A model generated the notes under the pieces. That model was not told where the DNA came from. It saw only the letters and a program-made list of their open reading frames with translations, and did no database searches. From IMG/VR virus record IMGVR_UViG_3300044974_001280, positions 166,446 through 230,445 of that record: a stretch of DNA of 64,000 nucleotides; one strand, written 5' to 3'. Positions 4,704 through 55,752 of this stretch are shown in pieces. A program made the translations under genes and the position numbers. Within the stretch, counting starts at the first letter, position 1. Each line of letters opens with the position of its first letter.

Positions 4704-5090
4704 TTGGAACCACCTATTATATATCATGTACCCTCCTGCGATGAGTGCAACATCCCTAAAGGATGGGGTCATGAGGTTGTCTTCGAAAATAACGAACTGT
4801 ATTGTGGAAAACTTCTATGTTTTAAGGGAGGAGCCAAATTTTCAATGCACTATCATTTGATCAAAGATGAAACTTGGTACGTAAAGGAAGGCACTTTTAT
4901 TTATCGGTATATAGACACCCGCAACGCAGAAGTGGTTGAAAAAAATTTAATAGAAGGTGATTCGGTCAGACAAATGCCCGGCCAACCACATCAACTGGAA
5001 GCAATAACGGATGGGATAATCTTCGAGGTTTCCACCCAACACTTTGACGAGGATTCTTATCGTGTTTGGAAAGGTGATTCACAAAAATAG
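4704..5090 (+). CDS. Cupin-domain protein (sugar isomerase-like)
   Basis: KGWGHE, YCGKLL, SMHYHLIKDETWYV, PGQPHQL, EVSTQH. Confidence 0.85.
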   Translation: MEPPIIYHVPSCDECNIPKGWGHEVVFENNELYCGKLLCFKGGAKFSMHYHLIKDETWYVKEGTFIYRYIDTRNAEVVEKNLIEGDSVRQMPGQPHQLEAITDGIIFEVSTQHFDEDSYRVWKGDSQK

Positions 5091-5107
5091 AAATTGAGTA
5101 GAGAAAA

Positions 5108-5893
5108 ATGAGCTCCGTTACCGTCATAATTCCAAATTACAACTTCTCTGAATTTCTTGATACGACTCTTTTTTCCGTTTTTTCGCAGATCACCAATTTC
5201 GACGTGCAAGTATTAGTGGGGGATGATTCTTCTCAAGATCAGAGCGCTGGTATTTTAACACGGTTCAAAAAATTTTACGGGCAGGACAAATTCGACTTTT
5301 TTATCAACACAGAAAATAAGGGAGAAGTAGAAACAGTTAAAAGATTACTTTCTAAAGCTAAAGGAAATTATATAGCCTATCTTGATGGTGATGACTATTG
5401 GATAGATCCTTATAAATTACAGAAACAATTTGATTTTCTTGAGAGTAATCCAGAATTTTCCGCGTCTTCTACCGGTTATTTAACTTTAGAAGGAGAGTAT
5501 GGATTTTGTCCACATCCAGAAGGAGATTTATTTTTTGGAGTTCCCGAAGAATTTATGGATAAAAATTTCACCTCCCCTGAATTTATTTCTACCGGCAGGA
5601 ACTGTGTATATGCATCCTCCCGTTTTTTTAGAAATTATGAGGATCTTTTTCAGCCTTACTTTTTCGAATTTCCGTATTCAGATTGGCCCATGAATTATGA
5701 ATTAAGCTTAAGGGGTAAGATTAACTACGATCATTACCCTAGCTACATTTATAGGAAACATTCGAATTCTTTAACTCATCCTAAAGAAATAGAAAAAGTG
5801 GATGAAACAAGTGAAAAAGAATGGCTTGATCAAAAGTCCCTGATTTTTACCAGGAGAAAAGAAGAATTTCAGAAAAATCAGAATAAACAATAG
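5108..5893 (+). CDS. Glycosyltransferase family 2
   Basis: VIIPNYN, GDDSSQD, YLDGDDYW. Confidence 0.9.
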   Translation: MSSVTVIIPNYNFSEFLDTTLFSVFSQITNFDVQVLVGDDSSQDQSAGILTRFKKFYGQDKFDFFINTENKGEVETVKRLLSKAKGNYIAYLDGDDYWIDPYKLQKQFDFLESNPEFSASSTGYLTLEGEYGFCPHPEGDLFFGVPEEFMDKNFTSPEFISTGRNCVYASSRFFRNYEDLFQPYFFEFPYSDWPMNYELSLRGKINYDHYPSYIYRKHSNSLTHPKEIEKVDETSEKEWLDQKSLIFTRRKEEFQKNQNKQ

Positions 5894-5898
5894 AATCA

Positions 5899-6147
5899 AT
5901 GGAGACGAAAAATCACATTATTAATTCTCTCAAAAAAAGGCATCAGCTTTACACTGGATTACACGATGAGCAAATTAAGAAAGATCACCTCTGGGTGCTG
6001 AACCATCCCTTAAAAGGCTCGGTTAAAAAAGAATGGACTGATTTTGGGGTAAATTTAATTATGGCTGAAATGGGCTTGGATCAGAGATCCGCCGAGATTG
6101 AGATGTCTTTCTTGGAGCAAGAGTACGAATCTTTAGCCTCTAGATAG
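5899..6147 (+). CDS. Hypothetical protein
   Basis: ORF in a co-directional run. Confidence 0.65.
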   Translation: METKNHIINSLKKRHQLYTGLHDEQIKKDHLWVLNHPLKGSVKKEWTDFGVNLIMAEMGLDQRSAEIEMSFLEQEYESLASR

Positions 6148-6190
6148 GTTCACGACACCCAGATTGGATATATAAAGGAAAAAATATCCA

Positions 6191-6778
6191 ATGCTATCAA
6201 GAATTTTACTTTTTGTCCTTTTTTTTCCTTTTTGTACATATTCACAAAGAGCATCTGTAGCGGTTAATGCGGGGGAATACTCTCTCGTTTACTCTGAAAT
6301 ATATCAGCAACCTCTAGAATTATCATACTCGGTCAGATGTACTGCGGCAAAGGAGAGCAGACAAGGATTGGATTTTTACCGGGTTGATTCCATCATTACC
6401 TCTGATCATGCGGATTACGAAAAGAATATCTGGGACAAAGGGCACCTAGCCCCGGCGGCTACTTTCAGTTGTTCTAAGGAGTCACTAGTAAGAACTTTCT
6501 CCTACCTCAACTGTGCTCTCCAACACCAAGATTTAAATCGGGGGGTTTGGAGAATTTTAGAGGCCAAAGAGAGACAATTGGTAGCAGAATTTCATCAGGT
6601 CGACGTTCTCATTAAACTAGATTTTTCAGGGTCTCCTGAAAAATTAAGTACGGGAGCAACAGTTCCAACTGGTTTTTGGAAAATCCTAACCATCGACAAG
6701 AAAGAAAAAATAACTTATTATTTTCCAAATCGTAAGCCGGCCTTTACAGATCCTAAAAAATTTCAAATAGCAAATTAA
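6191..6778 (+). CDS. Secreted DNA/RNA non-specific endonuclease (NucA/Serratia-like)
   Basis: Signal peptide; WDKGHLAPA, TFSYLNC..Q..LNRGVW..LE, VPTGFWK. Confidence 0.9.
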   Translation: MLSRILLFVLFFPFCTYSQRASVAVNAGEYSLVYSEIYQQPLELSYSVRCTAAKESRQGLDFYRVDSIITSDHADYEKNIWDKGHLAPAATFSCSKESLVRTFSYLNCALQHQDLNRGVWRILEAKERQLVAEFHQVDVLIKLDFSGSPEKLSTGATVPTGFWKILTIDKKEKITYYFPNRKPAFTDPKKFQIAN

Positions 6779-6843
6779 AAAATTTGAAACCTTGTTGGTG
6801 ATTCAATATATAAAGAAAGTTAAAACAAAAAACAAAAAAAACA

Positions 6844-7005
6844 ATGACAAAATCCCTGCTTACGCTCGCTCTCATTTCCATCCTAAGCTCCTGCGGTCCT
6901 GTAGTAGAAACTACAACTGATGAACCGGCAGTAGTTGAAGAAACCACTCCAGTTGACACTACAACAGAAGCTACCGCCCCTGTTGATACAGTTTCAGCTC
7001 AATAA
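6844..7005 (+). CDS. Small Thr/Glu-rich lipoprotein (53 aa, not in the ORF track)
   Basis: MTKSLLTLALISILSSC-GPVVETTTDEPAVVEETTPVDTTTEATAPVDTVSAQ; own promoter motif and terminator. Confidence 0.8.
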   Translation: MTKSLLTLALISILSSCGPVVETTTDEPAVVEETTPVDTTTEATAPVDTVSAQ

Positions 7006-7020
7006 GATTTCTTCTCTTCA

Positions 7021-7043
7021 ACCCAGCTTCGGCTGGGTTTTTT
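7021..7043 (+). terminator. Rho-independent terminator
   Basis: ACCCAGC-TTCG-GCTGGGT plus T run. Confidence 0.9.
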
Positions 7044-7068
7044 GTGATTAATTTACAAATTTGAACTT

Positions 7069-7701
7069 ATGCATAGATCAGAAGTGATCAATCAGATTAT
7101 CAGTACCAAAAAATTTAGCACCTACTTGGAGATAGGAGTAAGATGGCCTGAGGATTGTTACGATTTAATTCAATGCGAAGAGAAATCTGGGGTCGATCCA
7201 GGTCTAGAAAATCCTGAAAATCCGGTCAAGTATCCGTTTACCTCTGATGAATTTTTTTCCAGGCTAGAAAATAATCTGTTGGATTTACCTCCTGATTATG
7301 AGTGGGATCTTATTTTTATCGACGGATTACACCTTTCTTACCAGGTAGAAAAAGACATCTTAAATTCTTTGAATCACTTGACAGAAGAGGGAGTTATAGT
7401 TCTTCATGATTGTGATCCTTTTATGTATGAAGTAAATTACATTCGGGTCATCGAAGATTATCTTGGAGTAGCATGGAATGGAACAGTTTGGAAAACTATC
7501 TATAAGTTAAAGGCAACCAGGCCAGATCTGAATATTTGTACTGTTAATACCGACGAAGGTGTTGGACTGATCAAAAGGGAAAGCCAAGAGCTCGTTCCTT
7601 TCGATAACCCATATTTTGAGTATAAAATTTTCCAGCAAAATAGAACCAGAGATTTGAATTTAATTTCCCCTGAAAAAATATCTTCCTGGATTTTAGATTG
7701 A
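7069..7701 (+). CDS. Class I SAM methyltransferase (Methyltransf_24-like)
   Basis: YLEIGV, DLIFIDGLH, GVIVLHD, WNGTVWK. Confidence 0.85.
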   Translation: MHRSEVINQIISTKKFSTYLEIGVRWPEDCYDLIQCEEKSGVDPGLENPENPVKYPFTSDEFFSRLENNLLDLPPDYEWDLIFIDGLHLSYQVEKDILNSLNHLTEEGVIVLHDCDPFMYEVNYIRVIEDYLGVAWNGTVWKTIYKLKATRPDLNICTVNTDEGVGLIKRESQELVPFDNPYFEYKIFQQNRTRDLNLISPEKISSWILD

Positions 7702-7761
7702 AACTTAAAATCCATCGAAAACTAATTCAGATTAGGCCGTATAATTTGAAAATTCATCCCA

Positions 7762-8538
7762 TTGAAAACATTTCAAAAGCCCTCACAAGCCATCAAGTGG
7801 GCTAAGGAAAAATTGATCGATCACGGATATGTCGTACAGACCGAGAGATGGCAGGGTATACCTTCCCCTGACGACATGTGGGAAACCTTAAATACTTCTT
7901 TCTCTATGTTTGTCCCCCACACACTCGAAGAACTACGTGATGAGGTCAGACCTAATCTTCCCTGGGCGGACGATCATTTTGAAGAAAGAATCGGGGGCCA
8001 GCCGCTGAATCCACCTCCTTCTAACGAATGGTGGCCTTTCAACCAAAAGAAGAATTCCCAATTCAAAACAGAGGAGAAATTTTCTCACACTTATCCAGAA
8101 AGACTCTGGCCTAAATTTGCATCAGAAGAACCCAATTCGACCATGTTTGGCATTAGGTACAACTACGGTGACTTTGGTGATGTGATTGATTTGTTGGCAA
8201 GAGAACCTTTCACTAGACAGGCTTTTCTGCCCCTGTGGTTCCCGGAAGACACTGGATCTGTCCACGGGGAACGAGTTCCTTGTACAATCGGCTATCATTT
8301 TATGAGAAGAGCGGATTATCTACACATCGTGTATTACATCAGGTCCTGTGACTATCTCCGCCACTTTAGAGACGATATCTATATGGCTTGTCGGAAAGTT
8401 TTTTGGGTTCTAGAAAAATTGAGGGAAAGAAATCCCGAATCCTGGGGCGAGGTTAAACCTGGATTTTTTACCATGCACATCACTTCTTTGCATTGTTTCA
8501 ATAAGGAGAAAGAAGTTCTAAGACAAAATAATAAATAA
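7762..8538 (+). CDS. Thymidylate-synthase-fold enzyme, probable pyrimidine (dCMP-type) modifying enzyme
   Basis: TRQA, catalytic VPCT, RSCDYLRHFRDD (Asp where ThyA has the PFN Asn), SLHCF. Confidence 0.8.
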   Translation: MKTFQKPSQAIKWAKEKLIDHGYVVQTERWQGIPSPDDMWETLNTSFSMFVPHTLEELRDEVRPNLPWADDHFEERIGGQPLNPPPSNEWWPFNQKKNSQFKTEEKFSHTYPERLWPKFASEEPNSTMFGIRYNYGDFGDVIDLLAREPFTRQAFLPLWFPEDTGSVHGERVPCTIGYHFMRRADYLHIVYYIRSCDYLRHFRDDIYMACRKVFWVLEKLRERNPESWGEVKPGFFTMHITSLHCFNKEKEVLRQNNK

Positions 8539-8545
8539 AAAAATT

Positions 8546-9475
8546 ATGATCTCTCTAAATCACATTTTACCGGATAGAAACGGGATAGACTTTACCAGTC
8601 ATTTTGACGAGGAAAGGGAAATTGTAATTAAGTTTATAGATTCTCACACAAGATTGTGTTATTGGGGTGACATAATTAATGTTTTTCCCAAATGTTCATA
8701 CTGGGTAGCATATAGCGGTAGAATCACAAAATTTATCACTTTTGTAGTAGAGGATTTGCAAACTGGAGAAATCCTACTCGAAGTTTGTGATTACTCAGAT
8801 ACTTTTAGGCATGATATAAGAAATTTGGACCCAAAGAACAGGTTGAAAAATATAGGAAGTAATCTTTCAAAAAAAGACTTAGTAACAGGGCTTGTACTTT
8901 GGGAGATTTTTTTAAGTGGGGAATACAACCACGAACATTGTAAAGTGGAACCTGGAGATGTTGTTGTTGATATTGGGGCAAACATCGGTTTCTTTTCCTT
9001 TTTTTCGATTACAAAAGGAGCTGCACAAGTTCACTCGTTTGAACCAGACCCCAAGCTATCAAGTTTTATTCAAACAAACTTCGGTGATTTGCCAATTCAT
9101 GTCCACAATTTAGCTGTGTGGTCGGAAAAAAAGGATTTGAAACTAAATATTCATGAGTCAAGTGTTTTGAATTCAGTTTCTGTTTCGTTCGATCACACCG
9201 ATGAAAGTGTTTTTTGTCAAGGAGTTGTCCTGGAAGAATGGGCAAAAGAAAATGAGGTAAAAATAGATTTTTTAAAAATAGACTGCGAGGGAGGTGAATG
9301 GGAAATTTTTCCAAACATGAGCTCTGAATTTTTAAAGTCTATACCAAAGATAGTTTTGGAATATCATATTCATCCTCCGGATCAATTATTGCTTATCTTT
9401 TCAGAAAATGGATTTCAAACACACCACACTGGAAATATGATCTGGGCTTGGCAGAATAAAAAGATCTTGTCTTAG
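8546..9475 (+). CDS. FkbM-family methyltransferase
   Basis: VVDIGANIGFFS, SFEP, LKIDCEGGE. Confidence 0.92.
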   Translation: MISLNHILPDRNGIDFTSHFDEEREIVIKFIDSHTRLCYWGDIINVFPKCSYWVAYSGRITKFITFVVEDLQTGEILLEVCDYSDTFRHDIRNLDPKNRLKNIGSNLSKKDLVTGLVLWEIFLSGEYNHEHCKVEPGDVVVDIGANIGFFSFFSITKGAAQVHSFEPDPKLSSFIQTNFGDLPIHVHNLAVWSEKKDLKLNIHESSVLNSVSVSFDHTDESVFCQGVVLEEWAKENEVKIDFLKIDCEGGEWEIFPNMSSEFLKSIPKIVLEYHIHPPDQLLLIFSENGFQTHHTGNMIWAWQNKKILS

Positions 9476-9476
9476 C

Positions 9477-10598
9477 ATGAATTCTGATAATTTAATAGGA
9501 GAAAAAATATCAGATAAAAAGTTCTGTGTCATCATAGATGCATATCCCCAAACCACGGAGGAACAAGAAATTCTTCTGGCCAATCTAAAAATTTTTCAAC
9601 AAAATGAGATAGACGTTCTTTTAACTAGCCACCATCCATGTACTCCCGAGATTATTGAAAACACTACTTATTTTATTTTTGAAAGGAAAAACAATTATCA
9701 TTTCCTTGATTCAGACATTCTAAATTACAATCTAGAGGGAATACAAAATCCAGTTTACCTGAAATACATTCAAATAGGAAATGAAATGTTTAGAGACCAT
9801 TTGGTTGTTACCGGTTGGTCGGTTTCCATTGTCTCCCAATTTGTTAATTCGATTAAATTTTTGTGGTCAAAGGGATATGAATTTGCCTTTTATTTTGTTG
9901 GAGATTTCAAATGTCCGGATAATATTCAACAAAAATTCTCTGAAATTTTTTCGAATTTAGGGGAGCACAAAAATTACTTTATAAAAAATAATCCAAATTT
10001 TAGTAGCTGGTATTGCCCACACCTTTTTGGGTTTACTTTGGACGAAAGTTTGATTCAAAAAATTCCAAATCTCGATTTTTCGGATAATTCCAATTTTCAA
10101 AAGATTTTTCCCAATTGTGGTCTTGAAGATGTGATGCTAAAACTTTTTGGCGGGGATAATAATCTAGTTGATGAACATTCCGAGATGGATAAATTTTTCG
10201 GATTCGGAAATTGGAATACAGTAAGTTCGATCATAAAACCTGGGCCAAGCGCTTTACATTTCACCACAACTTCTTCACTATTCTGGAAGGAAGATCTATC
10301 GGATTGTTATTTACTTTTAAATGTTGAACCAGGTTGCCCTTGTAATGAAGTCAGCTTCTCCATTAAGATTATTACTGAAAATTCAGAAGAAATTTTCCAT
10401 CGCGAAATAATTCTAGGAAAGGGAGGGTGGTACAAAGAAAAATTGAATGATTTGTTTGTAGATGGGGACTCTGTAGTTTTCACAAAAAAATTACATAATA
10501 TAGAAGATGAAACATGTCAATTCACAGATTCTATAAAAATTAAAAGAGAAAACTTGTCTAAATATGCTTTGGTAAAAAATTACTATAAAATCGAATGA
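9477..10598 (+). CDS. Putative glycosyltransferase-like protein (paralog of 3414)
   Basis: IIDAYP..LLTSHHP..YFIFERKN. Confidence 0.5.
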   Translation: MNSDNLIGEKISDKKFCVIIDAYPQTTEEQEILLANLKIFQQNEIDVLLTSHHPCTPEIIENTTYFIFERKNNYHFLDSDILNYNLEGIQNPVYLKYIQIGNEMFRDHLVVTGWSVSIVSQFVNSIKFLWSKGYEFAFYFVGDFKCPDNIQQKFSEIFSNLGEHKNYFIKNNPNFSSWYCPHLFGFTLDESLIQKIPNLDFSDNSNFQKIFPNCGLEDVMLKLFGGDNNLVDEHSEMDKFFGFGNWNTVSSIIKPGPSALHFTTTSSLFWKEDLSDCYLLLNVEPGCPCNEVSFSIKIITENSEEIFHREIILGKGGWYKEKLNDLFVDGDSVVFTKKLHNIEDETCQFTDSIKIKRENLSKYALVKNYYKIE

Positions 10599-11365
10599 AA
10601 AGAAAAGAAATAAGTGTTATAATGCCGGTCTACAATTATGCTTATTTTTTAGATCGTGCTTTTTTTTCCGTTTACGTGCAAAAAATCGACTGCAATATTC
10701 ATTTTATAGCCTGCGATGACTGTTCTACAGATCAAAGTCTGGCTATTTTACACAGATTAAAAAATTTTGAAAACGAAAATTTTAAAATTTCGATATTTTC
10801 CAATAAAGAAAACAAAGGATTTATAGAAACCGTTATTTTTCTTCTCAAAAATTGTTCAACTTCTTATGTTGCTTATATAGACCCAGATGATTATTGGATA
10901 GATCCATATAAACTAAAAAAACAATTTGATTTTTTAGAAAATAATCCTGATTTTTCTCTCGTTAGCACTGGATATTTGATTAGTGAAGGAAGAAAATTGG
11001 TTCCCTCGGCGGATGGGAGCTTTTGGATTGCTGCTATGACAGAGTATAACTCCGTTTTACATCCAATTAGTGACGGAGAAATTGACAAAAAACTTTTACA
11101 TCATAGTAACTTGTGCTACTCATCATCAAGATTTTTTAGAAATTTCACTGACATTGATTTAAGTTATGTTAAAAATAAGCATTTCATAGATTGGGCTACC
11201 AATTTTGAATTATCTCTTCGCGGTAGAATAGGATATCTTGATTATCCATCATTTGTTTATGAAAAAAAAGAAGATTCAATGTCATCTAAAGCTCAAACTG
11301 AAATAACAGAAAAAGATTTAGATGAAATTAAATCGATTTTCAATCAAAAATTTCATAATTTTTAA
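10595..11365 (+). CDS. Glycosyltransferase family 2 (paralog of 5108)
   Basis: VIMPVYN, DDCSTD, IDPDDYWIDPYKL, SSRFFRN. Confidence 0.9.
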   Translation: MKRKEISVIMPVYNYAYFLDRAFFSVYVQKIDCNIHFIACDDCSTDQSLAILHRLKNFENENFKISIFSNKENKGFIETVIFLLKNCSTSYVAYIDPDDYWIDPYKLKKQFDFLENNPDFSLVSTGYLISEGRKLVPSADGSFWIAAMTEYNSVLHPISDGEIDKKLLHHSNLCYSSSRFFRNFTDIDLSYVKNKHFIDWATNFELSLRGRIGYLDYPSFVYEKKEDSMSSKAQTEITEKDLDEIKSIFNQKFHNF

Positions 11366-11376
11366 ATTTTTTAAGA

Positions 11377-12537
11377 ATGAAAAATATTCAATTATTCAAA
11401 CCTAAGTTCAGAACATCAGAAATCTGGGAACATATGCAAGAGTGTATGGAAATAGGATGGACAGGTTTAGGTTTTAAAACTCAGCAGATTGAAGAAGAAT
11501 GGAAAAAATACACCGGATTTAAGCATGCGCATTTTCTAAATTCGAACACCTCTGGTTTGCATCTTGCCTTAAAAATTTTAAAAGACGCCAATAAATGGAA
11601 AGAAGGAGACGAGATTATCACGTCCCCCTTAACTTTTGTGTCTTCAAATCACGCAATAATGTACGAAAGACTGAGACCAATCTTTGCAGACGTAGATGAA
11701 TTTCTATGTCTGGATCCAAAATCAGTAGAATCAAAAATCACCAAAAAAACCAAAGCTGTTTTATTTGTGGGAATTGGGGGTAATGCCGGGAGGTTCGATG
11801 AAATAGTAAATTTTTGCCAACGCAAAGGCCTTAAAATTATTTTAGATGCCGCACATATGGCTGGAACCTGGATAAAAAACAAAACAGAGGTTGGTGTTGG
11901 TTACTCGAAAGATCATGTTGGTTTAGATGCTGATGTTTCTATTTTTAGTTTTCAGGCGGTCAAAAATCTTCCGACCGCAGATTCGGGAATGATCTGTTTC
12001 AAGAATGAAGATTATGACGTATTAGCCAGAAAATTATCTTGGCTTGGAATTTCTAAAGACACTTACCAAAGATCACACGACAAAGGAAGTTATAAATGGG
12101 AATATGATCTCGTTGATGTTGGTTTCAAATATCATGGTAATTCTATGATGGCTTCGATGGCTTTAGTTGGTTTGAAATATCTTGAAGAGGATAACACCAG
12201 AAGAAGAGAAATCTGCCAAATGTATGAAAAGTCATTTCAATCTGCAGGCATCCAGTCAGTTAAAGTTTCTCCGTACACAGAACTTTCTTCTAGGCATTTG
12301 TATCAAATTGTTGTGGAAGAAAGAAACAAAACTATGGAATTTTTAAATATTCGTGGGATATATCCAGGAGTTCATTATCGTGATAATACCCATTATGATA
12401 TGTACAAATCACAATTTGGGTTGAATCCGAATTCATTGAACCTGAGCGAGAAAATTATTAGTTTACCTTTACATTTATTTTTAACCGATGATGATATTGA
12501 ATTTGTGATTCAAAACGTTATCGAATCACAAAAATAA
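11377..12537 (+). CDS. DegT/DnrJ/EryC1/StrS PLP-dependent sugar aminotransferase
   Basis: NSNTSGLHLAL, SPLTFVS, LDAAH, FSFQAVKNL, ISLPLH. Confidence 0.95.
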   Translation: MKNIQLFKPKFRTSEIWEHMQECMEIGWTGLGFKTQQIEEEWKKYTGFKHAHFLNSNTSGLHLALKILKDANKWKEGDEIITSPLTFVSSNHAIMYERLRPIFADVDEFLCLDPKSVESKITKKTKAVLFVGIGGNAGRFDEIVNFCQRKGLKIILDAAHMAGTWIKNKTEVGVGYSKDHVGLDADVSIFSFQAVKNLPTADSGMICFKNEDYDVLARKLSWLGISKDTYQRSHDKGSYKWEYDLVDVGFKYHGNSMMASMALVGLKYLEEDNTRRREICQMYEKSFQSAGIQSVKVSPYTELSSRHLYQIVVEERNKTMEFLNIRGIYPGVHYRDNTHYDMYKSQFGLNPNSLNLSEKIISLPLHLFLTDDDIEFVIQNVIESQK

Positions 12538-12542
12538 CATTT

Positions 12543-12947
12543 ATGACCATTCGCGAATTTCAGAAGGGAGATGAAGCTGGATTACTGGAAATCTTGAAGG
12601 AGACCTGGTACATCACAGAAATACAAGAAAACGTTTTATCTGAATGGATGACAAATAATTACAATTTTGTTGCGGTTGAAGAACAAGAAATCATAGGAAC
12701 AATTACACTCCATCTCCAAAGAAAATTAATCCGAAATGGCGGGTTAGCAGGATTCATTGAAGATGTGGCGGTGAAAGAAAAATTTAGAGGTAATAAAATT
12801 GGTTTTTTATTGGTTCAAAAAGCTTTGGAAAAAGCCAGGGATCTTGGATGTTATAAGGTTATTCTATCCTGTTTCGATGAGAGAATTAATTTCTATGAAA
12901 GATGTGGATTTTTCAGGGAGTGCAATACTATGAGAGTGGATCTTTAA
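12543..12947 (+). CDS. GNAT acetyltransferase (glucosamine-6-P N-acetyltransferase-like)
   Basis: KLIRNGG..GFIEDVAV..RGNKIG, GCYKVILSC, FYERCGF. Confidence 0.9.
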   Translation: MTIREFQKGDEAGLLEILKETWYITEIQENVLSEWMTNNYNFVAVEEQEIIGTITLHLQRKLIRNGGLAGFIEDVAVKEKFRGNKIGFLLVQKALEKARDLGCYKVILSCFDERINFYERCGFFRECNTMRVDL

Positions 12948-12957
12948 AATAAAAAAA

Positions 12958-13599
12958 ATGAACAATTCATACAACTTAAATTTAGATGGTATCATGGATG
13001 GACATCTAAAAACTTTATATAGAGGAATTATAACTGAAAAATCCCCATTTGATTACGTAATGTATCAAATGATAATTAATGAAATAAGACCCGATTTGAT
13101 AATAGAAATAGGGACTAATTATGGAGGATCGTGTCTGTATTTGGGTGATATTTTAAATAATATAGGTAAAGGTATGGTTCATACTGTGGATATTCAGGAT
13201 GAAACTTTTTTATCAAATTCCGAAGAAAAGAGGGGTTTGATTAATCGACATCCAAGAATTCAGAGATTCTTGGGAGGTTATCAAGAATACAACTTGGATT
13301 ATGCATCCTCATTTAAAAAAATTATGTTGATTGAAGATGGGTCACACAACTATAACGATGTTTTGTCTGTGATGAATAAATTCAAAGATTTAATCAGCGA
13401 AGATTCCTATATGATCGTTGAAGACGGAACTGTGAATTGGATGGGCATCGAAAAAAACTATGACGGAGGTCCTCTTAGAGCGATAGAAGAATTTTTACCA
13501 CAAAATCCACAATTCGAAATAGATAGAAAATGGTGTGATTTTTATGGTTACAATGTCACTTTTAATCCAAATGGATATTTAAAAAAAATTAATTTTTAA
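12958..13599 (+). CDS. CmcI-family (cephalosporin hydroxylase-like) O-methyltransferase
   Basis: KSPFD..YQ..I..IRPDLIIEIGTNYGGS, EDGSH, YMIVED, NPNGYL. Confidence 0.9.
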   Translation: MNNSYNLNLDGIMDGHLKTLYRGIITEKSPFDYVMYQMIINEIRPDLIIEIGTNYGGSCLYLGDILNNIGKGMVHTVDIQDETFLSNSEEKRGLINRHPRIQRFLGGYQEYNLDYASSFKKIMLIEDGSHNYNDVLSVMNKFKDLISEDSYMIVEDGTVNWMGIEKNYDGGPLRAIEEFLPQNPQFEIDRKWCDFYGYNVTFNPNGYLKKINF

Positions 13600-13606
13600 A
13601 AGAATT

Positions 13607-14533
13607 ATGAAAAAATTAGTTTTAATTAGTTCTCATTGTGATTCAGAAGAAAAAAGAAAAGTTCTAAAAATTAATTTGGAACTTTTAAGGCAAATAGACA
13701 CATCTATTTTGCTTTATTCGTCTATTCATCTGGAAAGAGACATTCTAAACTTAGTTGATTTTTATTTTTTCAACCCAAATAACCCATTAAAAGAGGATTC
13801 TTCTAACCTTTTTTGGAAAGAAGAATTTTTTGGAGCGAAAAAAATTAAATTTTACAGATTTTGGAGAAATAACCGTTTTGCTGGGTTTTCTCAGGTTCTG
13901 AAATTAGTTCAACTTGCAAGGATTCTAAATTATGACATGAATTATTTTATGCTATATGATTTGGTCATCGATAATCAAATTTTAAATTTCATCAAATACA
14001 AAAACCAAGAATCTTTTTTTGCTTTTAGAACAACCGAAAATGGAAAAAAATTAATTAATGATTGTGCTTCCCAATTTTTTTCCGTCTCACAATCAAAATT
14101 AGAAAATCTAGAATCTGAATTTATTTGGGAAAGATGTTTGGAGTTTGATTGTGCGGAACACTTTTGGGCAGATCTTGCCCAAAAAATTAATGTTTCAATT
14201 AACAGGGATTTTATTATCGAAGATCATATTTACACTTTTCGTAATTGGCACGAAGATTTTTACAATTATTCTCCCTGGCAGGAATTCAAAATTTATTTCT
14301 CCAAAAATGTTGGCACCGCAGATCCCCAACACTGTTTGGTTTACGATGTGAAACAACCCTTGGAAATCTTTATAAGAAAGGATAACGATATCCAAAAGAT
14401 GACAATATCAGAGTTCCAACAATTTGAGATTGATCCTAGTTTACAAAAATTCGAGTTTTGGAGAAATGGTAAAATTTTTGACGTTTTGGATCAAGCCGAA
14501 AAGTTTCCAGGAGGAGGATGGGAATTTGTATGA
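13607..14533 (+). CDS. Putative glycosyltransferase-like protein (paralog of 3414)
   Basis: LISSHC..LLYSSIH..DFYFFNPNNP, MLYD. Confidence 0.5.
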   Translation: MKKLVLISSHCDSEEKRKVLKINLELLRQIDTSILLYSSIHLERDILNLVDFYFFNPNNPLKEDSSNLFWKEEFFGAKKIKFYRFWRNNRFAGFSQVLKLVQLARILNYDMNYFMLYDLVIDNQILNFIKYKNQESFFAFRTTENGKKLINDCASQFFSVSQSKLENLESEFIWERCLEFDCAEHFWADLAQKINVSINRDFIIEDHIYTFRNWHEDFYNYSPWQEFKIYFSKNVGTADPQHCLVYDVKQPLEIFIRKDNDIQKMTISEFQQFEIDPSLQKFEFWRNGKIFDVLDQAEKFPGGGWEFV

Positions 14534-15519
14534 AAAGAGCTTTTATTACACATGCCACTGAAAATTATCTAGACATAGCCAAAAATTTAGCTACAAGTAT
14601 AGAACTCTTCTCTAAATTTCCTATTATTGTTTGCGGTGTAAATTGCTCTCCTGATGCGTCCCTTTTCTTTAAAGGACTGGAAAAAGTTATCTTTAGAAAT
14701 TTAGATCTAGAACTGGATGAAGACTACCTAGATAATTTTACTCATCAAGCTAATGGTAATTTTTACGTTACCAGAGAAAATCCAAAAATTTATAAAATTT
14801 TATGTGCTAAGACTATGGCTATGCAGCTGGCTTTAGAAGAAGGTTTCGAAGAGCTCTGCTACTTAGATTCGGATTGTATAGCTTCTCCTATAATCGACGA
14901 AATGTTCGATTGGATGCCCATCGTAAAAGACTACCCAGTTTGCACGGAGGGCATTCATCAATATATGATCATAGTCGAGCCAAATGGGTTTGAAAGAGGA
15001 AATCCATTTGAAGGGTGCTGGCCAAAGGCCGATTTAACCAAAACCCTAGAATGGCCTTTAATGCAATTTTTAGAAATGCCTGCGGAATCTAGGGGAACCT
15101 ACAGAACAACCAACGTTATACTCTGTAATTCATCTTGTTTGAATTTTGTTAAAACATGGAGGGAATTCTGTTTTCTGCTTCCCAAATTGAAAATTAGTTT
15201 ATCTAGGGTTGCCGCTTTTCACGAAGAGACAATCTACAACGTTTTATCGTGGAAAAAAACCAACGAAGGATTTCCACTATGCTATATAAATTTAAGAGAT
15301 GGGATCAACACGGTTTGTCATTTTTATGAAGAGGGACATCCAGGATTTTCCACCTGGATGTCGGAGGAAAATAAGGACTATTCTCTTAATTTTTATAGAA
15401 TTCCTCCTTCTAAAAGGGACATCAAGGTTCTCCACGGCGAGAAAAGACCGGAAGAATTTCTGAAAATTTTAGATTATTTGAAACATCTCCAGCAATCTAA
15501 TTATTTTAACACTTTATAA
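14530..15519 (+). CDS. GT-A nucleotide-diphospho-sugar transferase
   Basis: FITHATENY, YLDSD, EETIYN, VLHGEK; ATGA overlap with the previous gene. Confidence 0.7.
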   Translation: MKRAFITHATENYLDIAKNLATSIELFSKFPIIVCGVNCSPDASLFFKGLEKVIFRNLDLELDEDYLDNFTHQANGNFYVTRENPKIYKILCAKTMAMQLALEEGFEELCYLDSDCIASPIIDEMFDWMPIVKDYPVCTEGIHQYMIIVEPNGFERGNPFEGCWPKADLTKTLEWPLMQFLEMPAESRGTYRTTNVILCNSSCLNFVKTWREFCFLLPKLKISLSRVAAFHEETIYNVLSWKKTNEGFPLCYINLRDGINTVCHFYEEGHPGFSTWMSEENKDYSLNFYRIPPSKRDIKVLHGEKRPEEFLKILDYLKHLQQSNYFNTL

Positions 15520-15520
15520 C

Positions 15521-16255
15521 ATGGATCTTTCTTTGGTTGTTCACACGTGTGATTCGTACCATCAGTTTTGGTTTGGTATGTTGTATTCCTTAGACCTGTA
15601 CTGGGATTTTGAAAAAATCCCTGTTTATTGGGCATCCGAAGAACGGAATGTCAAGGATTTTGAACTTTCGTGCAGGGGTCACCTCTTCAAGCCTAACTCC
15701 GCGATGCAAAGCATTTTGACCGGAAAGACGGATAAAAATGGATTTTCCACCAGAATGAAAAAAACCTTATCCGAAATTACCTCAAAATGGATCATTTATC
15801 TCCAGGAAGATATGTGGCTAAAATCTTCTTTTCCCTATCCCGTTTTAGAACAACTTTTGCTGTTCGCAGAAGTCCAAAAGGCGGAATCCATCAAGATTCA
15901 CACCAAATTACACTATTACGATGCCTACCGCCTAGATCCTACCCCTTACGTCATTAACAAGGTTAGGATCATGAAGCACAGTCAAGGAGAAAATTATCTC
16001 CACTCTCATAATGCAACTATCTGGAATAGAGAGTACTTAATCCAAAACATTGTTGATGGAGAAGATCCCTGGACAAACGAGGTTGAAGGGTCTAAAAGAA
16101 TGAGCAGCAAAGTTCACAATCATTATCACTATAACGTCCACTGGTATTCCCAGCCTGGAGTTTGTGATAAGGGCCAACCTTCAGCAGAGTATTACCTTAT
16201 GGGTCCTATTTTAGATGACCTAATGAGCATGAAATTATCGTCCGAAAAATTTTAA
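15521..16255 (+). CDS. Glycosyltransferase-like protein
   Basis: VVHTCDSY, YLQEDMWL, ATIWNREYL, DPWTNE. Confidence 0.65.
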   Translation: MDLSLVVHTCDSYHQFWFGMLYSLDLYWDFEKIPVYWASEERNVKDFELSCRGHLFKPNSAMQSILTGKTDKNGFSTRMKKTLSEITSKWIIYLQEDMWLKSSFPYPVLEQLLLFAEVQKAESIKIHTKLHYYDAYRLDPTPYVINKVRIMKHSQGENYLHSHNATIWNREYLIQNIVDGEDPWTNEVEGSKRMSSKVHNHYHYNVHWYSQPGVCDKGQPSAEYYLMGPILDDLMSMKLSSEKF

Positions 16256-26317: not shown

Positions 26318-26413
26318 TGAAAGTTATACTCTTAGATATTCAAAATAGTTGAGGTTGGTAATTTTTCTAAAAAATTTTGTTTTTAGTTACAAAATGTATA
26401 TATTTGCACCATT

Positions 26414-27130: not shown

Positions 27131-27139
27131 ACCTTTGAT

Positions 27140-53128: not shown

Positions 53129-53155
53129 CATACAACAACAAAACTATAGAAAGTC

Positions 53156-53449
53156 ATGAATAAAATAGAAATAACACCTGTACCTGAAATTGTTGCAAAT
53201 ACACAACGAGTATGTGAAATCAGATTTGATTGTTTGGTTACAATGCATGATGTGGCATACAGAAAATATGAAGGATTTTTAGGCGAAGAAAAATGGTCTA
53301 AAACACCACAATGGTTTAAAGCCAACCATAGAATAACATTAGAAGGTGTTAAGCATGCCGACCCATATGAACTTGGGATGAGAATTAAACAAATGTTCCA
53401 TCAGATGGAAGATACAATTAACAAATATGAAAATGGAATAAATTATTAA
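53156..53449 (+). CDS. Hypothetical protein
   Basis: Co-directional ORF. Confidence 0.65.
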   Translation: MNKIEITPVPEIVANTQRVCEIRFDCLVTMHDVAYRKYEGFLGEEKWSKTPQWFKANHRITLEGVKHADPYELGMRIKQMFHQMEDTINKYENGINY

Positions 53450-53453
53450 ATAT

Positions 53454-53642
53454 ATGAATAACACAAAATTTAAAGTAGGAGATAAAGCGTGGAAACCGAA
53501 AGGATATAAATTTCCTTGCACAATTGTATCCGTATTCACAACAATAAAAGGTGAAATTAGATTAGTAGCCGAAATGGATGAATATGGATTATTACACATT
53601 TTTAACGAACAACAATTAGAACATTATGAACAACCTCGATAA
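53454..53642 (+). CDS. Small SH3-like hypothetical protein
   Basis: KFKVGD...KGY.F...[15 protein letters not shown]. Confidence 0.65.
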
Positions 53643-53943
53643 ACAGTATCAATCACTACTCCAAGATATATTAGATAATGGAGTGGAAAAGAAAGATAGA
53701 ACAGGTACTGGTACTATTTCAGTATTTGGTAGACAAATCCGTCATAAAATGAGTGAAGGGTTTTCACTTCTTACAACCAAGAAAATGGCGTGGAAGTCAA
53801 TATGTACAGAATTACTTTGGTTTTTAAGAGGCGATACATCAATAGAGTATCTTCTTAAAAATGACTGTAACATTTGGACGGGGGATGCTTATCAAGCATA
53901 CCTAAAAGAATGTGAGAAGTTAAAGAAAGATGAGGAAAAATAA
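53626..53943 (+). CDS. thyA: Thymidylate synthase, N-terminal fragment
   Basis: [35 protein letters not shown]. Confidence 0.92.
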
Positions 53944-53987: not shown

Positions 53988-54959
53988 ATGTGTCTAAAAA
54001 CTAAAATTGAAACAACCTTGTGTGTTATAAAAAATAATGAGTATAAAATATTGTCTCAAAAATTAAGAGTAATTGAATCATCACTTAAACAGGATATTAT
54101 TGATAGTACTCAATATCTAACTATTTACAATCCTAAATTGGTTGATAGGATAAGGTATATCTTGAAAGATAGAAACTCCGTTAATACTTGCTTCCATTGT
54201 GGTAACCCAATTATTGATTTGAATAGAAAATTTTGTTCTGCAAAGTGTAATAACAATTCGGAACTAACTAAAAATAAATTTAGAGAAAGATATAATAGTT
54301 TATCGGAAACAGATAAAATCATAAGAAATAATAAAAGACGTAAAACTGTTAATGAAAAATACGGTGGTTATACTTTACAAAGTCCTGAACTAAAAAAGAA
54401 AATTAAATCAACTATGATTAAAAAATATGGTGTTGAACATTCTTTTCATAGTGATGCAATAAAACAAAAAGCGTTAAATACTTGGATTAAAAAGTATGGT
54501 GTTGACAACCCGTTTAAATCTCACAGTATAAAAGAGAAAATAAAGCAAGTATTAAAAGATAAATACGGGGTTAATAATTCCGCTAATATTAACTCGGAAA
54601 ATAGAATTGGTAATGGTATTAAAACAAAAATCGAAAGAGGATGGATAATACCTGATGAGTTTTTGTCGGATTACCAAATTTATAGAAAAAAAGTTAAACG
54701 ATTAACTGAAACAACATATAAAATGTATAAAAACATTATAAACCCAAATAATTTAGAAAGAGTAACAAATGGAAAAATTGGGTTCCAATTAGACCACAAA
54801 TACTCAATAATTGAAGGATTTTTGAATAATGTAGAACCTGAAATTATTAGTCATCACTGTAATCTACAAATGATAGAATGGAGTAGTAATAGAACTAAAA
54901 GTAAAAGATGTGATATTGATTTAGAACAATTAAAAAATGAAATAAAAAGTTATGAATAA
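53988..54959 (+). mobile_element. Free-standing HNH-type homing endonuclease inserted in thyA
   Basis: CxxC..FCS..C, KYG repeats (KYGGY, KYGVEH, KYGVDN, KYGVNN), LDHKYSI...NLQMI...N..K. Confidence 0.8.
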
Positions 54960-55752
54960 AGAACACTTACACCCAGATGGAAGACCATACACCCAAGAAG
55001 AATTCATCAACAAAATCAAAACAGATGATGAGTTTGCTAAGAAGTGGGGTGATTTGGGACCAATTTATGGTAAACAGTGGAGAAAATGGAAAACCGAAGT
55101 TGCTATTCCAACAACATTAAAAATTGATGATGGTGATGATATTGAACCCTTATATGTAAAAGGAACACAGTATATTGACCAAATCCAAAACCTAATCAAC
55201 GACCTTAAAACAAATCCTGATAGTAGGAGATTAATGGTTTCGGCTTGGAATGTAGGTGAATTAGACCAAATGGTTCTCCCACCTTGTCATTATGGATTTC
55301 AAGTTTATACAAGAGAGTTAAGTTATGAAGAACGGTGTAATATATTTCAATCAACAGAAAGATTTAAAATGGAAACCCGAGAACATATTAAAGAGTTAAA
55401 TATTAAAATAATGAATGAAGCCGAAGTTCCAACCAGAGCAATCTCTCTAATGTGGAATCAACGCTCAGTAGATACATTCTTGGGTTTACCATTCAACATT
55501 GCTTCTTATGGATTATTATTGGAAATGATTGCAGATGAAGTACAAATGATACCTGATGAATTGATTGGTAATTTAGGAGATACACATTTGTATTTAAATC
55601 ATATTGAACAAGCAAAAGAGCAAATAAAAAGAGAACCATTTAGACTACCAAATGTTCACGTTAGAGATGGTATCGAATCATTTATGCCAGGAGATATTAT
55701 TTTAGAAAATTATGTATCACATCCAACAATTAAAGCGCCCCTGTCCAATTGA
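54952..55752 (+). CDS. thyA: Thymidylate synthase, C-terminal fragment
   Basis: GDLGPIYGKQWR, PDSRRLMVSAWN, LPPCH, QRSVDTFLGLPFNIASY, GDTHLYLNH. Confidence 0.95.
   Translation: MNKEHLHPDGRPYTQEEFINKIKTDDEFAKKWGDLGPIYGKQWRKWKTEVAIPTTLKIDDGDDIEPLYVKGTQYIDQIQNLINDLKTNPDSRRLMVSAWNVGELDQMVLPPCHYGFQVYTRELSYEERCNIFQSTERFKMETREHIKELNIKIMNEAEVPTRAISLMWNQRSVDTFLGLPFNIASYGLLLEMIADEVQMIPDELIGNLGDTHLYLNHIEQAKEQIKREPFRLPNVHVRDGIESFMPGDIILENYVSHPTIKAPLSN

What the first reader, a model, noticed from the sequence alone, without database searches (positions are those of the whole stretch)
7762..8538. Second thymidylate-synthase-fold enzyme with a cytosine-type specificity residue
Seen: RSCDYLRHFRDDI aligns with ThyA RSVDTFLGLPFNI and puts Asp at the Asn position; the catalytic PC is retained. 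The window already encodes a canonical ThyA. Established: Asn-to-Asp at this position gives dCMP specificity, as in T4 gp42 dCMP hydroxymethylase. Inference: the enzyme makes a modified cytosine nucleotide for genome-wide substitution.
Basis: partly seen in the sequence, partly recalled or inferred. Interest (0 to 1): 0.75.

Follow-up and report, generated by a model that had tools for sequence, protein, structure and literature searches.

The report
Uncharacterised cytosine-type thymidylate-synthase-fold phage enzyme
A lake-water jumbo phage encodes, besides an ordinary (but split) thymidylate synthase, a second enzyme of the same fold from a large virus-only clade whose active site is built for cytosine nucleotides yet fits none of the four known chemistries of this superfamily, so it probably makes a modified cytosine building block whose identity is still unknown.

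Summary
ORF 7762-8538 (+, 258 aa, TTG start) has the thymidylate-synthase (TS) fold: AlphaFold pLDDT 95.9, and Foldseek finds only TS-fold enzymes. It keeps the catalytic Pro-Cys (Cys174) and the RSxD phosphate and ring motif. Four independent alignments put Asp205 at E. coli Asn177. The window also encodes a canonical ThyA, but it is split into two ORFs by a DUF7487 gene.

The protein belongs to a monophyletic clade seen here only on phage and viral contigs (more than 4,800 sequences). Its profile is cytosine-type (N177D, H147T/S). It fails the signature of every characterised clade:
- not ThyA or an Xp12-type methylase (Glu58 is Asn/Asp; folate-site Leu172-Gly173 is Arg-His)
- not a hydroxymethylase (Cys-3 is an invariant Arg, not Asp/Glu)
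- not a 5-hydroxy-dCMP synthase (Asp169 is kept)

In small phages the family sits in a module of kinase, dCTPase, a second TS-fold "partner", the TS-like gene, dCMP deaminase and PolA. This matches the neighbourhood that MetaGPA studies associated with predicted cytosine-modified contigs. The window's phage has no such module and no confident dCTPase, so genome-wide substitution is unproven. The product is unknown.

The parts
7762..8538 (+). TS-fold enzyme of the uncharacterised Arg143/His173/Asp177 clade (258 aa, TTG start)
   Evidence: ORF. phrog_160 9e-26. PF00303 only 18.8 bits, below the 24.3 cut-off. AF2 pLDDT 95.9. Foldseek finds only TS-fold enzymes. The clade is monophyletic with SH-aLRT 99.
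8269..8286 (+). Active-site loop E170-R171-V172-P173-C174-T175. Cys174 is the catalytic nucleophile (E. coli C146). Arg171 is at position L143. Thr175 is at position H147.
   Evidence: Translation. Column counts: R 87/88, C 86/88, T/S 86/88. An intein in relative P0121 is inserted exactly before this Cys.
8341..8379 (+). RSCDYLRHFRDDI. Arg194, Ser195 and Asp197 correspond to R166, S167 and D169. Arg200-His201 replace folate-site L172-G173. Asp205 is at position N177.
   Evidence: Translation. Column counts: R 88/88, S 83/88, D 84/88, R 75/88, H 79/88, D 86/88. PDB profile alignment.
7948..7992 (+). Family-specific motif RPNLPWADDHFEERI. Asn65 occupies the position of the general-acid Glu58 (E. 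coli) or Glu60 (T4). W68 and R76 are invariant; H72 and E75 are nearly invariant.
   Evidence: Translation. HHalign against T4 gp42, RB69 gp48 and E. coli ThyA. Column counts: N 54 and D 23 of 91. Invariants.
8092..8094 (+). Tyr111, which corresponds to E. coli Tyr94 (the C5 proton-abstraction base). It lies in the motif FSHTYPER, so the residue at Tyr-2 is His109, not Ser.
   Evidence: Y in 87/88 members. H109 in 84/91.
53626..53943 (+). Canonical ThyA, N-terminal part (Pfam TS positions 1-90)
   Evidence: 103.6 bits. Translation.
53988..54959 (+). DUF7487 ORF that interrupts ThyA (323 aa); a possible free-standing mobile-element gene
   Evidence: PF24308 6e-16. No Rfam intron match in 53000-56500.
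54952..55752 (+). Canonical ThyA, C-terminal part (Pfam TS positions 76-265). It has PPCH, QRSVDTFLGLPFNIASY and Asn at position 177.
   Evidence: 210.1 bits. Translation.

Best explanation
The ORF encodes a stand-alone pyrimidine-nucleotide C5-modifying enzyme of the TS fold that acts on a cytosine nucleotide, most probably dCMP.

Inferred mechanism, by analogy with the superfamily. Arg194, Ser195 and Arg152 of the partner subunit clamp the 5'-phosphate. Asp205 reads and protonates N3/N4 of cytosine. The Cys174 thiolate adds to C6, which makes C5 nucleophilic. A group is transferred to C5. Tyr111 removes the C5 proton and the thiol leaves. The modified dCMP would then be phosphorylated; the phage has an adenylate/UMP-CMP-kinase-family NMP kinase. 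It would be incorporated into phage DNA during replication.

Shown here:
- the fold
- retention of the covalent-catalysis and phosphate-binding residues
- the cytosine-type residues
- membership of a distinct clade seen only on phage and viral contigs
- the clade's association with dCTPase, deaminase, kinase and polymerase genes in small phages

Inferred, not shown: the substrate, any activity, and incorporation into DNA.

The transferred group cannot be read from the sequence, because the cofactor side of the pocket is rebuilt. Glu58 is Asn/Asp, Leu143 is an invariant Arg, and Leu172-Gly173 is Arg-His. There are also new invariant residues His72, Glu75, Arg76, His109, Glu113 and Arg114.

My split for the product is:
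- 5-methyl-dCMP, about 0.30 (an Xp12-like pathway logic)
- a C5 group not yet described for this superfamily, about 0.25
- 5-hydroxy-dCMP by a flavin route, about 0.15
- 5-hydroxymethyl-dCMP, about 0.10
- dTMP, about 0.08
- something else, about 0.12
For: Fold and catalytic core. AF2 pLDDT is 95.9. Foldseek top hits are cytosine-specific TS-fold enzymes, MilA and the HY126 dCMP hydroxylase, at TM about 0.7. C146, R166, S167, D169, R126', Y94, W80 and H207 are conserved in at least 83 of 88 members.

Cytosine specificity. N177D is present in 86/88 and H147T/S in 86/88 members. These are the two positions most associated with cytosine-modified contigs (PMC8670742). The best PDB sequence hit is the N229D dCMP-specific TS mutant.

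Distinct clade. It is monophyletic (SH-aLRT 99) and separate from ThyA, Xp12/PaMx74, T4 gp42 with RB69 gp48, and the hmU synthases. HHalign scores to all references are similar. There are more than 4,875 homologs and 674 clusters at 50% identity. The ESM Atlas lists its neighbours as virus-dominated clusters (63-100% viral).

Functional context in relatives. The order kinase, dCTPase (MazG, PRA-PH or dUTPase_2), partner, TS-like gene, dCMP deaminase, PolA is seen in GTE2, Zuko, Strzyga, Serbin, P744 and CPAS-15. In large phages the gene sits among RecA-like, DnaB, RNase HII, GMP-reductase-like and Metallophos genes.

The site matters. An intein is inserted exactly before the catalytic Cys in a 62%-identical relative.

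Own genome. It has both RNR subunits, an ADK-family NMP kinase and a dCMP deaminase.
Against: No activity, substrate or product was measured for any member, and no paper in the searchable library characterises the clade.

The general-acid Glu, which PMC6400193 describes as conserved in all TS, CH and dCH enzymes, is missing. Folate-dependent one-carbon transfer may therefore be impaired.

The window's phage lacks the module seen in small phages. It has no partner gene and no confident dCTPase. Its deaminase is distant. It also keeps a canonical ThyA.

The immediate neighbours are methyltransferases and sugar-modifying genes, not replication genes. I could not inspect the model coordinates, so the placement of Arg171, Arg200 and His201 in the pocket rests on alignment to ThyA positions. 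PMC13326640 lists L143 and G173 among the residues within 6 A of C5.
Confidence: 0.55

Rival explanations
1. It is what GenBank annotators call it: a very divergent but genuine thymidylate synthase (dUMP to dTMP). In this reading, the small-phage module of dCTPase, deaminase, TS and thymidylate kinase is simply a dCTP-to-dTTP salvage line.
For: Over 130 phage records annotate homologs as thymidylate synthase. [quoted passage not shown] Serbin and P744 have no other PF00303 gene.
Against: Asp replaces Asn177 in 86/88 members. This change switches TS from dUMP to dCMP (Liu and Santi 1992 and Hardy and Nalivaika 1992, as cited in PMC8670742 and PMC13326640). Glu58, Leu143 and Leu172-Gly173 are all replaced. 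The window's phage already has a canonical ThyA, so a second dTMP synthase would be redundant. The Pfam TS score is below the cut-off.
Confidence: 0.08
2. It supplies a hydroxyl-bearing cytosine (5-hydroxy- or 5-hydroxymethyl-dCMP). After replication, the surrounding island of glycosyltransferases and sugar-tailoring enzymes decorates that base. This would be a glycosylated-cytosine DNA hypermodification cluster like those of RB69, DLP3 and RL38JI.
For: The gene lies inside a block with a cupin, two GT2 genes, a DegT aminotransferase, a GNAT and methyltransferases of the CmcI, FkbM and Methyltransf_24 types. In RB69 and DLP3 the TS homolog is clustered with NDP-sugar synthesis genes and DNA glycosyltransferases (PMC13326640). 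The family shares three features with RB69 gp48: loss of Glu58, Y209F, and an AED-aromatic motif. HY126 AfhB is among the top fold hits. A 77%-identical relative has GT1 and GT9 genes 6-8 kb downstream.
Against: The diagnostic D169N of 5-hydroxy-dCMP synthases is absent, with D kept in 84/88 members. The Asp/Glu at Cys-3 required for hydroxymethylation is Arg. In 93-96%-identical relatives, the GT2, DegT and GNAT genes are missing or swapped while the TS-like gene stays. In most other family members the neighbours are replication genes. Such islands of sugar genes are usually read as cell-surface modification genes (my own knowledge, not tested here).
Confidence: 0.15
3. It acts on a substrate not destined for DNA. 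One option is a ribonucleotide (CMP) or free nucleoside for a small molecule, as with MilA in mildiomycin synthesis, followed by O-methylation by the neighbouring methyltransferases. Another option is RNA.
For: MilA (CMP hydroxymethylase) is the top structural match and the third-best profile hit. Tyr209, which contacts the deoxyribose 3'-OH in ThyA (my own knowledge), is Phe in 77/88 members. Three methyltransferase genes flank the gene here and in L036.
Against: In almost all other contexts the gene sits with DNA replication genes, dCTPase, dCMP deaminase and DNA polymerase genes. RB69 gp48, a proven dCMP enzyme, also has Phe at position 209. MilA similarity is only 12-14% identity, and the Foldseek E-values of the MilA and ThyA hits lie within about two orders of magnitude.
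Confidence: 0.1
4. It uses the Cys-C6 adduct for chemistry at C4 rather than C5 (hydrolytic deamination or amine exchange on cytosine), or it is a non-catalytic nucleotide-binding or regulatory subunit.
For: Loss of Glu58 and a bulky His at Gly173 argue against canonical folate binding. Saturating the 5,6 bond is known to activate C4 of cytosine (established chemistry of C5-methyltransferases; my own knowledge).
Against: Tyr94, the base that removes the C5 proton, is invariant. So are W80 and D169, which line the cofactor site. The modules already contain a zinc deaminase. The near-complete conservation of about 45 positions and the intein at the catalytic Cys argue for an active enzyme.
Confidence: 0.05

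Closest known systems
T4 gp42 deoxycytidylate hydroxymethylase (PDB 1B5E, 6A9A)
   Same: TS fold, short C-terminus, catalytic Cys, RSxD motif, Asp at position N177, Thr at position H147, Tyr94 equivalent.
   Different: The Asp145 equivalent (Cys-3) is Arg. The Ser94 equivalent (Tyr-2) is His. The Glu60 equivalent is Asn. Gly at position 173 is His. HHalign score is only 54, and the two do not group specifically in the tree. The signature rules come from PMC6400193.
RB69 gp48 and HY126 AfhB, flavin-dependent 5-hydroxy-dCMP synthases (PDB 9IQU, 9IQC)
   Same: N177D, H147T, Y209F, loss of the Glu58 general acid, a non-Gly residue at position 173, and a shared AED-aromatic motif after the W/Y of helix 3. 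AfhB is among the top Foldseek hits.
   Different: The diagnostic D169N is absent. Position 143 is Arg, not Glu. It is a separate clade on a long stem. Flavin binding is untested.
Xp12 and PaMx74 dCMP methyltransferases (5-methyl-dCMP synthases)
   Same: N177D. In small phages the family shares the same neighbourhood logic of pyrophosphatase, TS homolog, deaminase and PolA (bioRxiv 10.1101/2024.12.05.627091).
   Different: The Xp12 and PaMx74 enzymes score 138-145 bits on Pfam TS, against 18.8 bits for the target and 28.5-29.7 bits for its Serbin and P744 homologs. They keep Glu58 and the SDxFVGLP folate motif, have Asn at Cys-3 by direct counting, and branch near ThyA.
MilA, the CMP hydroxymethylase of mildiomycin biosynthesis (PDB 5JNH)
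   Same: Best structural match (TM 0.70-0.72) and Asp at position 177.
   Different: 12-14% identity. MilA keeps the general-acid Glu68 (PMC6400193) and has Asp at the L143 position (PMC13326640). It is a cellular antibiotic-pathway enzyme.
Canonical ThyA (E. coli; also encoded in split form at 53626-55752)
   Same: Fold, dimer-type phosphate clamp, Cys, Tyr94, Trp80, His207.
   Different: N177D, H147T, E58N, L143R, L172R, G173H and Q165I. It lacks the C-terminal 40 residues that close over folate. It is below the Pfam gathering score.

Membership tests
Canonical thymidylate synthase ThyA (PF00303, EC 2.1.1.45) | Reaches the Pfam gathering score | tested here: not met
   18.8 bits against a cut-off of 24.3, and only residues 138-198 match.
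Canonical thymidylate synthase ThyA (PF00303, EC 2.1.1.45) | Catalytic Cys146 plus the phosphate-binding residues R166, S167 and R126' | tested here: met
   C174, R194, S195 and R152; each is conserved in at least 83/88 members.
Canonical thymidylate synthase ThyA (PF00303, EC 2.1.1.45) | Asn177 (uracil specificity) | tested here: not met
   Asp205; D in 86/88 members.
Canonical thymidylate synthase ThyA (PF00303, EC 2.1.1.45) | Glu58 general acid and the folate-site residues Leu143, Leu172 and Gly173 | tested here: not met
   Asn65, Arg171, Arg200 and His201.
dCMP/dUMP hydroxymethylases (T4 gp42, SPO1 gp29 type) | Asp or Glu three residues before the catalytic Cys (the water activator; D145N is inactive) | tested here: not met
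   Arg in 87/88 members. All five reference hydroxymethylases and hydroxylases have D or E there. The rule is from PMC6400193 and PMC13326640.
dCMP/dUMP hydroxymethylases (T4 gp42, SPO1 gp29 type) | Ser or Thr two residues before the catalytic-base Tyr | tested here: not met
   His109 in the motif FSHTY; H in 84/91 members.
dCMP/dUMP hydroxymethylases (T4 gp42, SPO1 gp29 type) | Asp at position N177 (for the dCMP-specific members) | tested here: met
   Asp205.
5-hydroxy-dCMP synthases (RB69 gp48, DLP3 gp80, HY126 AfhB) | D169N, the diagnostic substitution | tested here: not met
   Asp197 is retained; D in 84/88 members. The rule is from PMC13326640.
5-hydroxy-dCMP synthases (RB69 gp48, DLP3 gp80, HY126 AfhB) | Bound flavin cofactor and O2-dependent hydroxylation | not testable with these tools
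   This needs purified protein. Only indirect similarities were seen: Glu58 lost, Y209F, and a non-Gly residue at position 173.
Xp12-type dCMP methyltransferases | Branches with Xp12 and PaMx74 and has a strong Pfam TS match with a canonical folate site | tested here: not met
   It is a separate clade. Pfam scores are 18.8 bits for the target (28.5-29.7 for the Serbin and P744 homologs) against 138-145 bits. The folate motif is replaced.
Uncharacterised virus clade (part of phrog_160; signature Arg143, Thr/Ser147, His173, Asp177, PWAxxHFxER) | All signature residues present, and the protein falls inside the monophyletic clade | tested here: met
   R171, T175, H201, D205 and the motif at 7948-7992. 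SH-aLRT is 99. The signature persists down to 28% identity in Clostridium phage CPAS-15.
T4-paradigm genome-wide cytosine replacement pathway | Phage dCTPase that removes dCTP and supplies dCMP | tested here: inconclusive
   No MazG, PRA-PH or trimeric dUTPase was found. One 160-aa ORF scores 21.1 bits on dUTPase_2, against a cut-off of 22.9. The genome is about 85% complete.
T4-paradigm genome-wide cytosine replacement pathway | Phage dNMP kinase that accepts the modified nucleotide | tested here: inconclusive
   An ADK/UMP-CMP-kinase-family NMP kinase lies at genome positions 141865-142497 (PF00406, 1.9e-36). Its specificity is unknown.
T4-paradigm genome-wide cytosine replacement pathway | Modified base actually present in virion DNA | not testable with these tools
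   All 19 DNA runs that hold the phage are kept only as assembled contigs.

The most novel reading that the evidence does not exclude
The clade catalyses a C5 (or other ring) chemistry on dCMP that is new for the thymidylate-synthase superfamily. The product would be neither methyl, hydroxymethyl nor hydroxyl. The reaction would use a pocket rebuilt around Arg143, Arg172 and His173, with no Glu58, and hence a non-folate or differently bound co-substrate. In small phages it would work together with a second, tandem cytosine-type TS-fold enzyme. The product would be a so far undescribed cytosine derivative in the DNA of thousands of phages, including many cultured Gordonia, Streptomyces, Serratia and Clostridium phages.
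Probability: 0.25. Interest if true: 0.85.

Novelty: new variant of a known kind. Interest (0 to 1): 0.62.

Why it matters
[quoted passage not shown] Each newly characterised clade has so far revealed a new base or pathway; the latest is 5-hydroxycytosine in 2025-26. This clade is large and appears to be virus-only. It is mostly invisible to Pfam-threshold screens and is routinely annotated as plain thymidylate synthase. Its first-shell residues fit none of the published predictive rules.

If it makes a modified dCMP, several things follow. Many cultured phages, including easy SEA-PHAGES isolates, would carry unrecognised modified DNA. That would affect restriction and CRISPR evasion, sequencing, and phage-therapy work. 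The rules now used to predict products from sequence (N177, L143, D169) would need another class. The clade is directly testable with an existing in vivo assay.

Tried and rejected
1. Nucleotide search of phage records with 4 kb around the gene found no match. The phage has no close cultured relative, and PHROGs recognise almost none of its large proteins.
2. ThyX is absent from the genome.
3. No group I intron was found in the split ThyA: Rfam gave no hit at E<=0.1. Intron or free-standing insertion remains undecided.
4. I searched the window's genome for the small-phage "partner" gene, by protein and by HMM over all ORFs, and found none.
5. Sequence-profile proof that the partner is TS-like failed: HHalign was not significant. 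Only conserved-residue spacing and a fold search with a low-confidence model (pLDDT 56) support it.
6. Cluster 21, a 279-aa gene directly downstream in 18 loci, is not partner-like.
7. Read-level evidence for base modification was not obtainable. All runs are held as contigs.
8. Seven literature searches and targeted reading found no characterised member.
9. Assignment to the archaeal short TS family (TIGR03283) is rejected: 28.9 bits against a cut-off of 174.6.
10. Gordonia phage Phendrix gp180 looked like a distant member, but it has Thr143 and Gly173, so it belongs to another N177D clade.
Full report
**What is there.** The window is positions 166446-230445 of a 230-kb IMG/VR viral contig that is about 85% complete. 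The phage occurs in at least 19 lake-water metagenome runs and is very distant from cultured phages. ORF 7762-8538 (+, 258 aa, TTG start) exists as described. Homologs of identical length match it end to end. The motif RSCDYLRHFRDDI is at 8341-8379 and ERVPCT at 8269-8286.

**Is it a TS-fold enzyme?** Yes, but a remote one. It scores below the Pfam TS gathering threshold (18.8 against 24.3 bits). It matches phrog_160 at 9e-26 and the archaeal short TS model only weakly. An AlphaFold model built on 91 diverse homologs is very confident (pLDDT 95.9, pTM 0.93). Foldseek against the PDB returns only TS-fold enzymes. The top hits are MilA CMP hydroxymethylase and the phage HY126 dCMP hydroxylase AfhB (TM about 0.7, 12-15% identity).

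**Is the Asp really at the Asn position?** Yes. Four alignments agree:
- MAFFT with E. coli ThyA, RB69 Td, T4 gp42, RB69 gp48, SPO1 gp29 and the M6 and ViI enzymes
- a family profile against PDB, where the best hit is the L. casei N229D mutant
- HHalign against each reference
- ungapped counting from the conserved Arg

Across 88 representatives that share at most about 50% identity, the column is Asp in 86.

**The canonical ThyA.** The window does encode one, with PPCH and QRSVDTFLGLPFNIASY. It is in two ORFs, 53626-53943 and 54952-55752, separated by a DUF7487 ORF. Rfam finds no intron.

**What family is it?** The deep searches find more than 4,875 homologs and 674 clusters at 50% identity. 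Every source seen here is a phage record or a viral or metagenomic contig, and the ESM Atlas lists its neighbours as virus-dominated clusters (63-100% viral). In phage GenBank records there is a sharp cluster of 138 records at E<=1e-3. Of these, 112 are near full-length matches at 38-47% identity, mainly Gordonia phages plus Streptomyces, Mycobacterium, Serratia, Yersinia, Brevundimonas and Stutzerimonas phages. Clostridium phages follow at 28% identity, and below that the hits are noise.

A maximum-likelihood tree makes the family one clade (SH-aLRT 99) on a long stem. It forms an unresolved trichotomy with the T4 gp42 plus RB69 gp48 pair and the dUMP hydroxymethylases. Xp12 and PaMx74 (5-methyl-dCMP synthases) branch nearer ThyA. 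HHalign scores to all references are similar, 39-77.

**Active-site signature (E. coli numbering).**
- Kept: W80, Y94, R126', C146, R166, S167, D169, H207.
- Cytosine-type: N177D, and H147T/S as in gp42 and gp48.
- Unique and nearly invariant: L143R (87/88), L172R (75/88), G173H (79/88), Q165 hydrophobic, R127Q and Y209F.
- The general-acid Glu58 is Asn (54/91) or Asp (23/91).
- New invariant polar residues sit in the rebuilt segment PNLPWAxxHFxER (7948-7992): H72, E75 and R76. H109, E113 and R114 lie around Tyr111.

PMC13326640 lists 12 residues within 6 A of C5 of dUMP in E. coli ThyA. At four of them this family carries a fixed substitution relative to ThyA: L143R, H147T/S, G173H and N177D.

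**Applying the published rules.**
- N177D implies a dCMP substrate (PMC8670742, PMC13326640).
- Asp/Glu at Cys-3 plus Ser at Tyr-2 implies hydroxymethylation, and D145N is inactive in T4 (PMC6400193). Here the residues are Arg and His.
- D169N implies 5-hydroxy-dCMP (PMC13326640). Here it is Asp.
- The Xp12-type methylases keep Glu58 and the SDxFVGLP folate motif. Here both are replaced.

The protein is therefore not a member of any characterised clade, although it most probably works like them up to the Cys-C6 adduct. The signature persists at 28% identity in Clostridium phage CPAS-15. Gordonia phage Phendrix gp180 (Thr143, Gly173) belongs to a different N177D clade.

**Genomic company.** There are three contexts.

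(i) Small siphophages of Actinobacteria, Proteobacteria and Firmicutes carry a conserved module. Its order is nucleotide kinase, dCTP pyrophosphatase (dUTPase_2, PRA-PH or MazG), a 250-350-aa "partner", the TS-like gene, dCMP deaminase and DNA polymerase I. The deaminase was not annotated in the fetched Strzyga and CPAS-15 regions. This module resembles the neighbourhood that MetaGPA work linked to contigs predicted to carry modified cytosine. In that work, adjacent deaminases were proposed to turn 5-methyl-dC nucleotides into thymidine nucleotides (PMC8670742; bioRxiv 10.1101/2024.12.05.627091).

The partner has no Pfam match. It does have an invariant Cys, Arg and Asp, with the Arg-to-Asp spacing of R166 to N177 and a Glu at the D169 position. 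A low-confidence model (pLDDT 56) hits only TS-fold enzymes, with AfhB first. These phages therefore probably carry two tandem cytosine-type TS-fold genes.

(ii) In large and jumbo aquatic phages (55-77% identity to the target), the gene lies among replication and nucleotide-metabolism genes: split PolB, RecA-like, DnaB, RNase HII, a GMP-reductase-like gene and a Metallophos gene. The last two are often directly upstream.

(iii) In the window's own lineage the gene sits inside an island of a cupin, GT2, DegT, GNAT and several methyltransferases. In 93-96%-identical relatives, the GT2, DegT and GNAT genes are missing or exchanged while the TS-like gene stays. A functional link to glycosylation is therefore weak.

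**Does this phage replace all its cytosine?** This is unproven. Its genome has a dCMP deaminase about 148 kb away. It also has a nucleotide cluster with both RNR subunits and an ADK/UMP-CMP-kinase-family NMP kinase. There is no MazG, PRA-PH or trimeric dUTPase. The only candidate pyrophosphatase scores just under the dUTPase_2 cut-off. The partner gene is absent. No raw reads were available to look for modification signals.

**Verdict.** The best explanation (confidence 0.55) is a dCMP-directed enzyme that uses covalent Cys catalysis. It belongs to an uncharacterised virus clade that feeds a modified cytosine nucleotide into phage DNA synthesis. The product is unknown, and the cofactor site is visibly rebuilt.

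An intein inserted exactly before the catalytic Cys in a relative, together with about 45 near-invariant positions, argues that the enzyme is active and important. No paper in the searchable library characterises the clade.

Noticed in passing
window 53626-55752: The canonical ThyA is split into two ORFs, 53626-53943 and 54952-55752, by a 323-aa DUF7487 ORF (53988-54959). The break falls in the variable surface loop between the Trp80 region and Tyr94. Rfam finds no group I intron. It could be an unrecognised intron or a gene split by a free-standing mobile gene.
   Followed up: partly
protein P0121 (62% identical relative); also P0221 and P0233: P0121 (636 aa) carries an intein inserted exactly between ...RVP and the catalytic Cys, which serves as the +1 residue. 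P0221 and P0233 carry LAGLIDADG-domain insertions. Mobile elements have therefore invaded this gene family more than once.
   Followed up: partly
L005:5192-5998, L004:5214-6044, L033:3958-4848, L034:3886-4944, L035:4141-4977, L131:3208-3954; IMG/VR loci L112, L117-L126: A conserved "partner" gene lies directly upstream of the TS-like gene in small phages. It has no Pfam domain. It has an invariant Cys, Arg and Asp with ThyA-like spacing, and a fold search hits only TS-fold enzymes, though the model is weak. This is probably a second cytosine-type TS-fold protein, giving a tandem pair. In CPAS-15 it is mis-annotated as a colanic acid glycosyltransferase. It is absent from the window's genome.
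   Followed up: partly
window 4704-16255: A variable island of sugar-tailoring genes surrounds the TS-like gene: a cupin, two GT2 genes, DegT aminotransferase, GNAT, and CmcI-, FkbM- and Methyltransf_24-type methyltransferases. Its gene content differs even among 93-96%-identical relatives.
   Followed up: partly
window 6191-6778: A DNA/RNA non-specific endonuclease (PF01223, 7e-22) with a hydrophobic, signal-peptide-like N-terminus. It is present in some relatives and absent in others. An Endonuclease_NS gene also lies near the TS-like gene in a 373-kb relative (L022).
   Followed up: no
window 25241-27787 and 37062-38132: An RNA-repair-like gene set: a T4 Rnl1-type RNA ligase, an R2K ATP-grasp protein, a HAD_SAK_2 phosphatase and a second RNA ligase with a PHA02142 OB domain. 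This suggests a counter to host tRNA- or RNA-cleaving defences.
   Followed up: no
window 17469-18521: A glutamine-synthetase-like protein (Gln-synt_N plus Gln-synt_C, 350 aa). It is conserved in the 96%-identical relative L036. Its role is unknown.
   Followed up: no
G000:C1:138285-144540 and 26124-27336 (outside the window): The phage's nucleotide-metabolism cluster holds a borderline dimeric-dUTPase-like ORF, an RNR small subunit with an ATP cone, an RNR large subunit, an ADK-family NMP kinase and a GT2-TPR protein. The dCMP deaminase sits elsewhere, next to a sigma-70-like factor.
   Followed up: partly
window 7740-7764: A perfect TATAAT hexamer at 7740-7745 lies 16 nt upstream of the TTG start (7762). 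There is no obvious Shine-Dalgarno sequence between them.
   Followed up: no
L132:3755-4636 (Gordonia phage Phendrix gp180): This is another N177D TS-like protein (Thr143, Gly173). It lies next to a thymidylate kinase, a dCMP deaminase and a DNA polymerase, but outside the clade studied here. Cytosine-type TS homologs have therefore diversified into several uncharacterised lineages.
   Followed up: no
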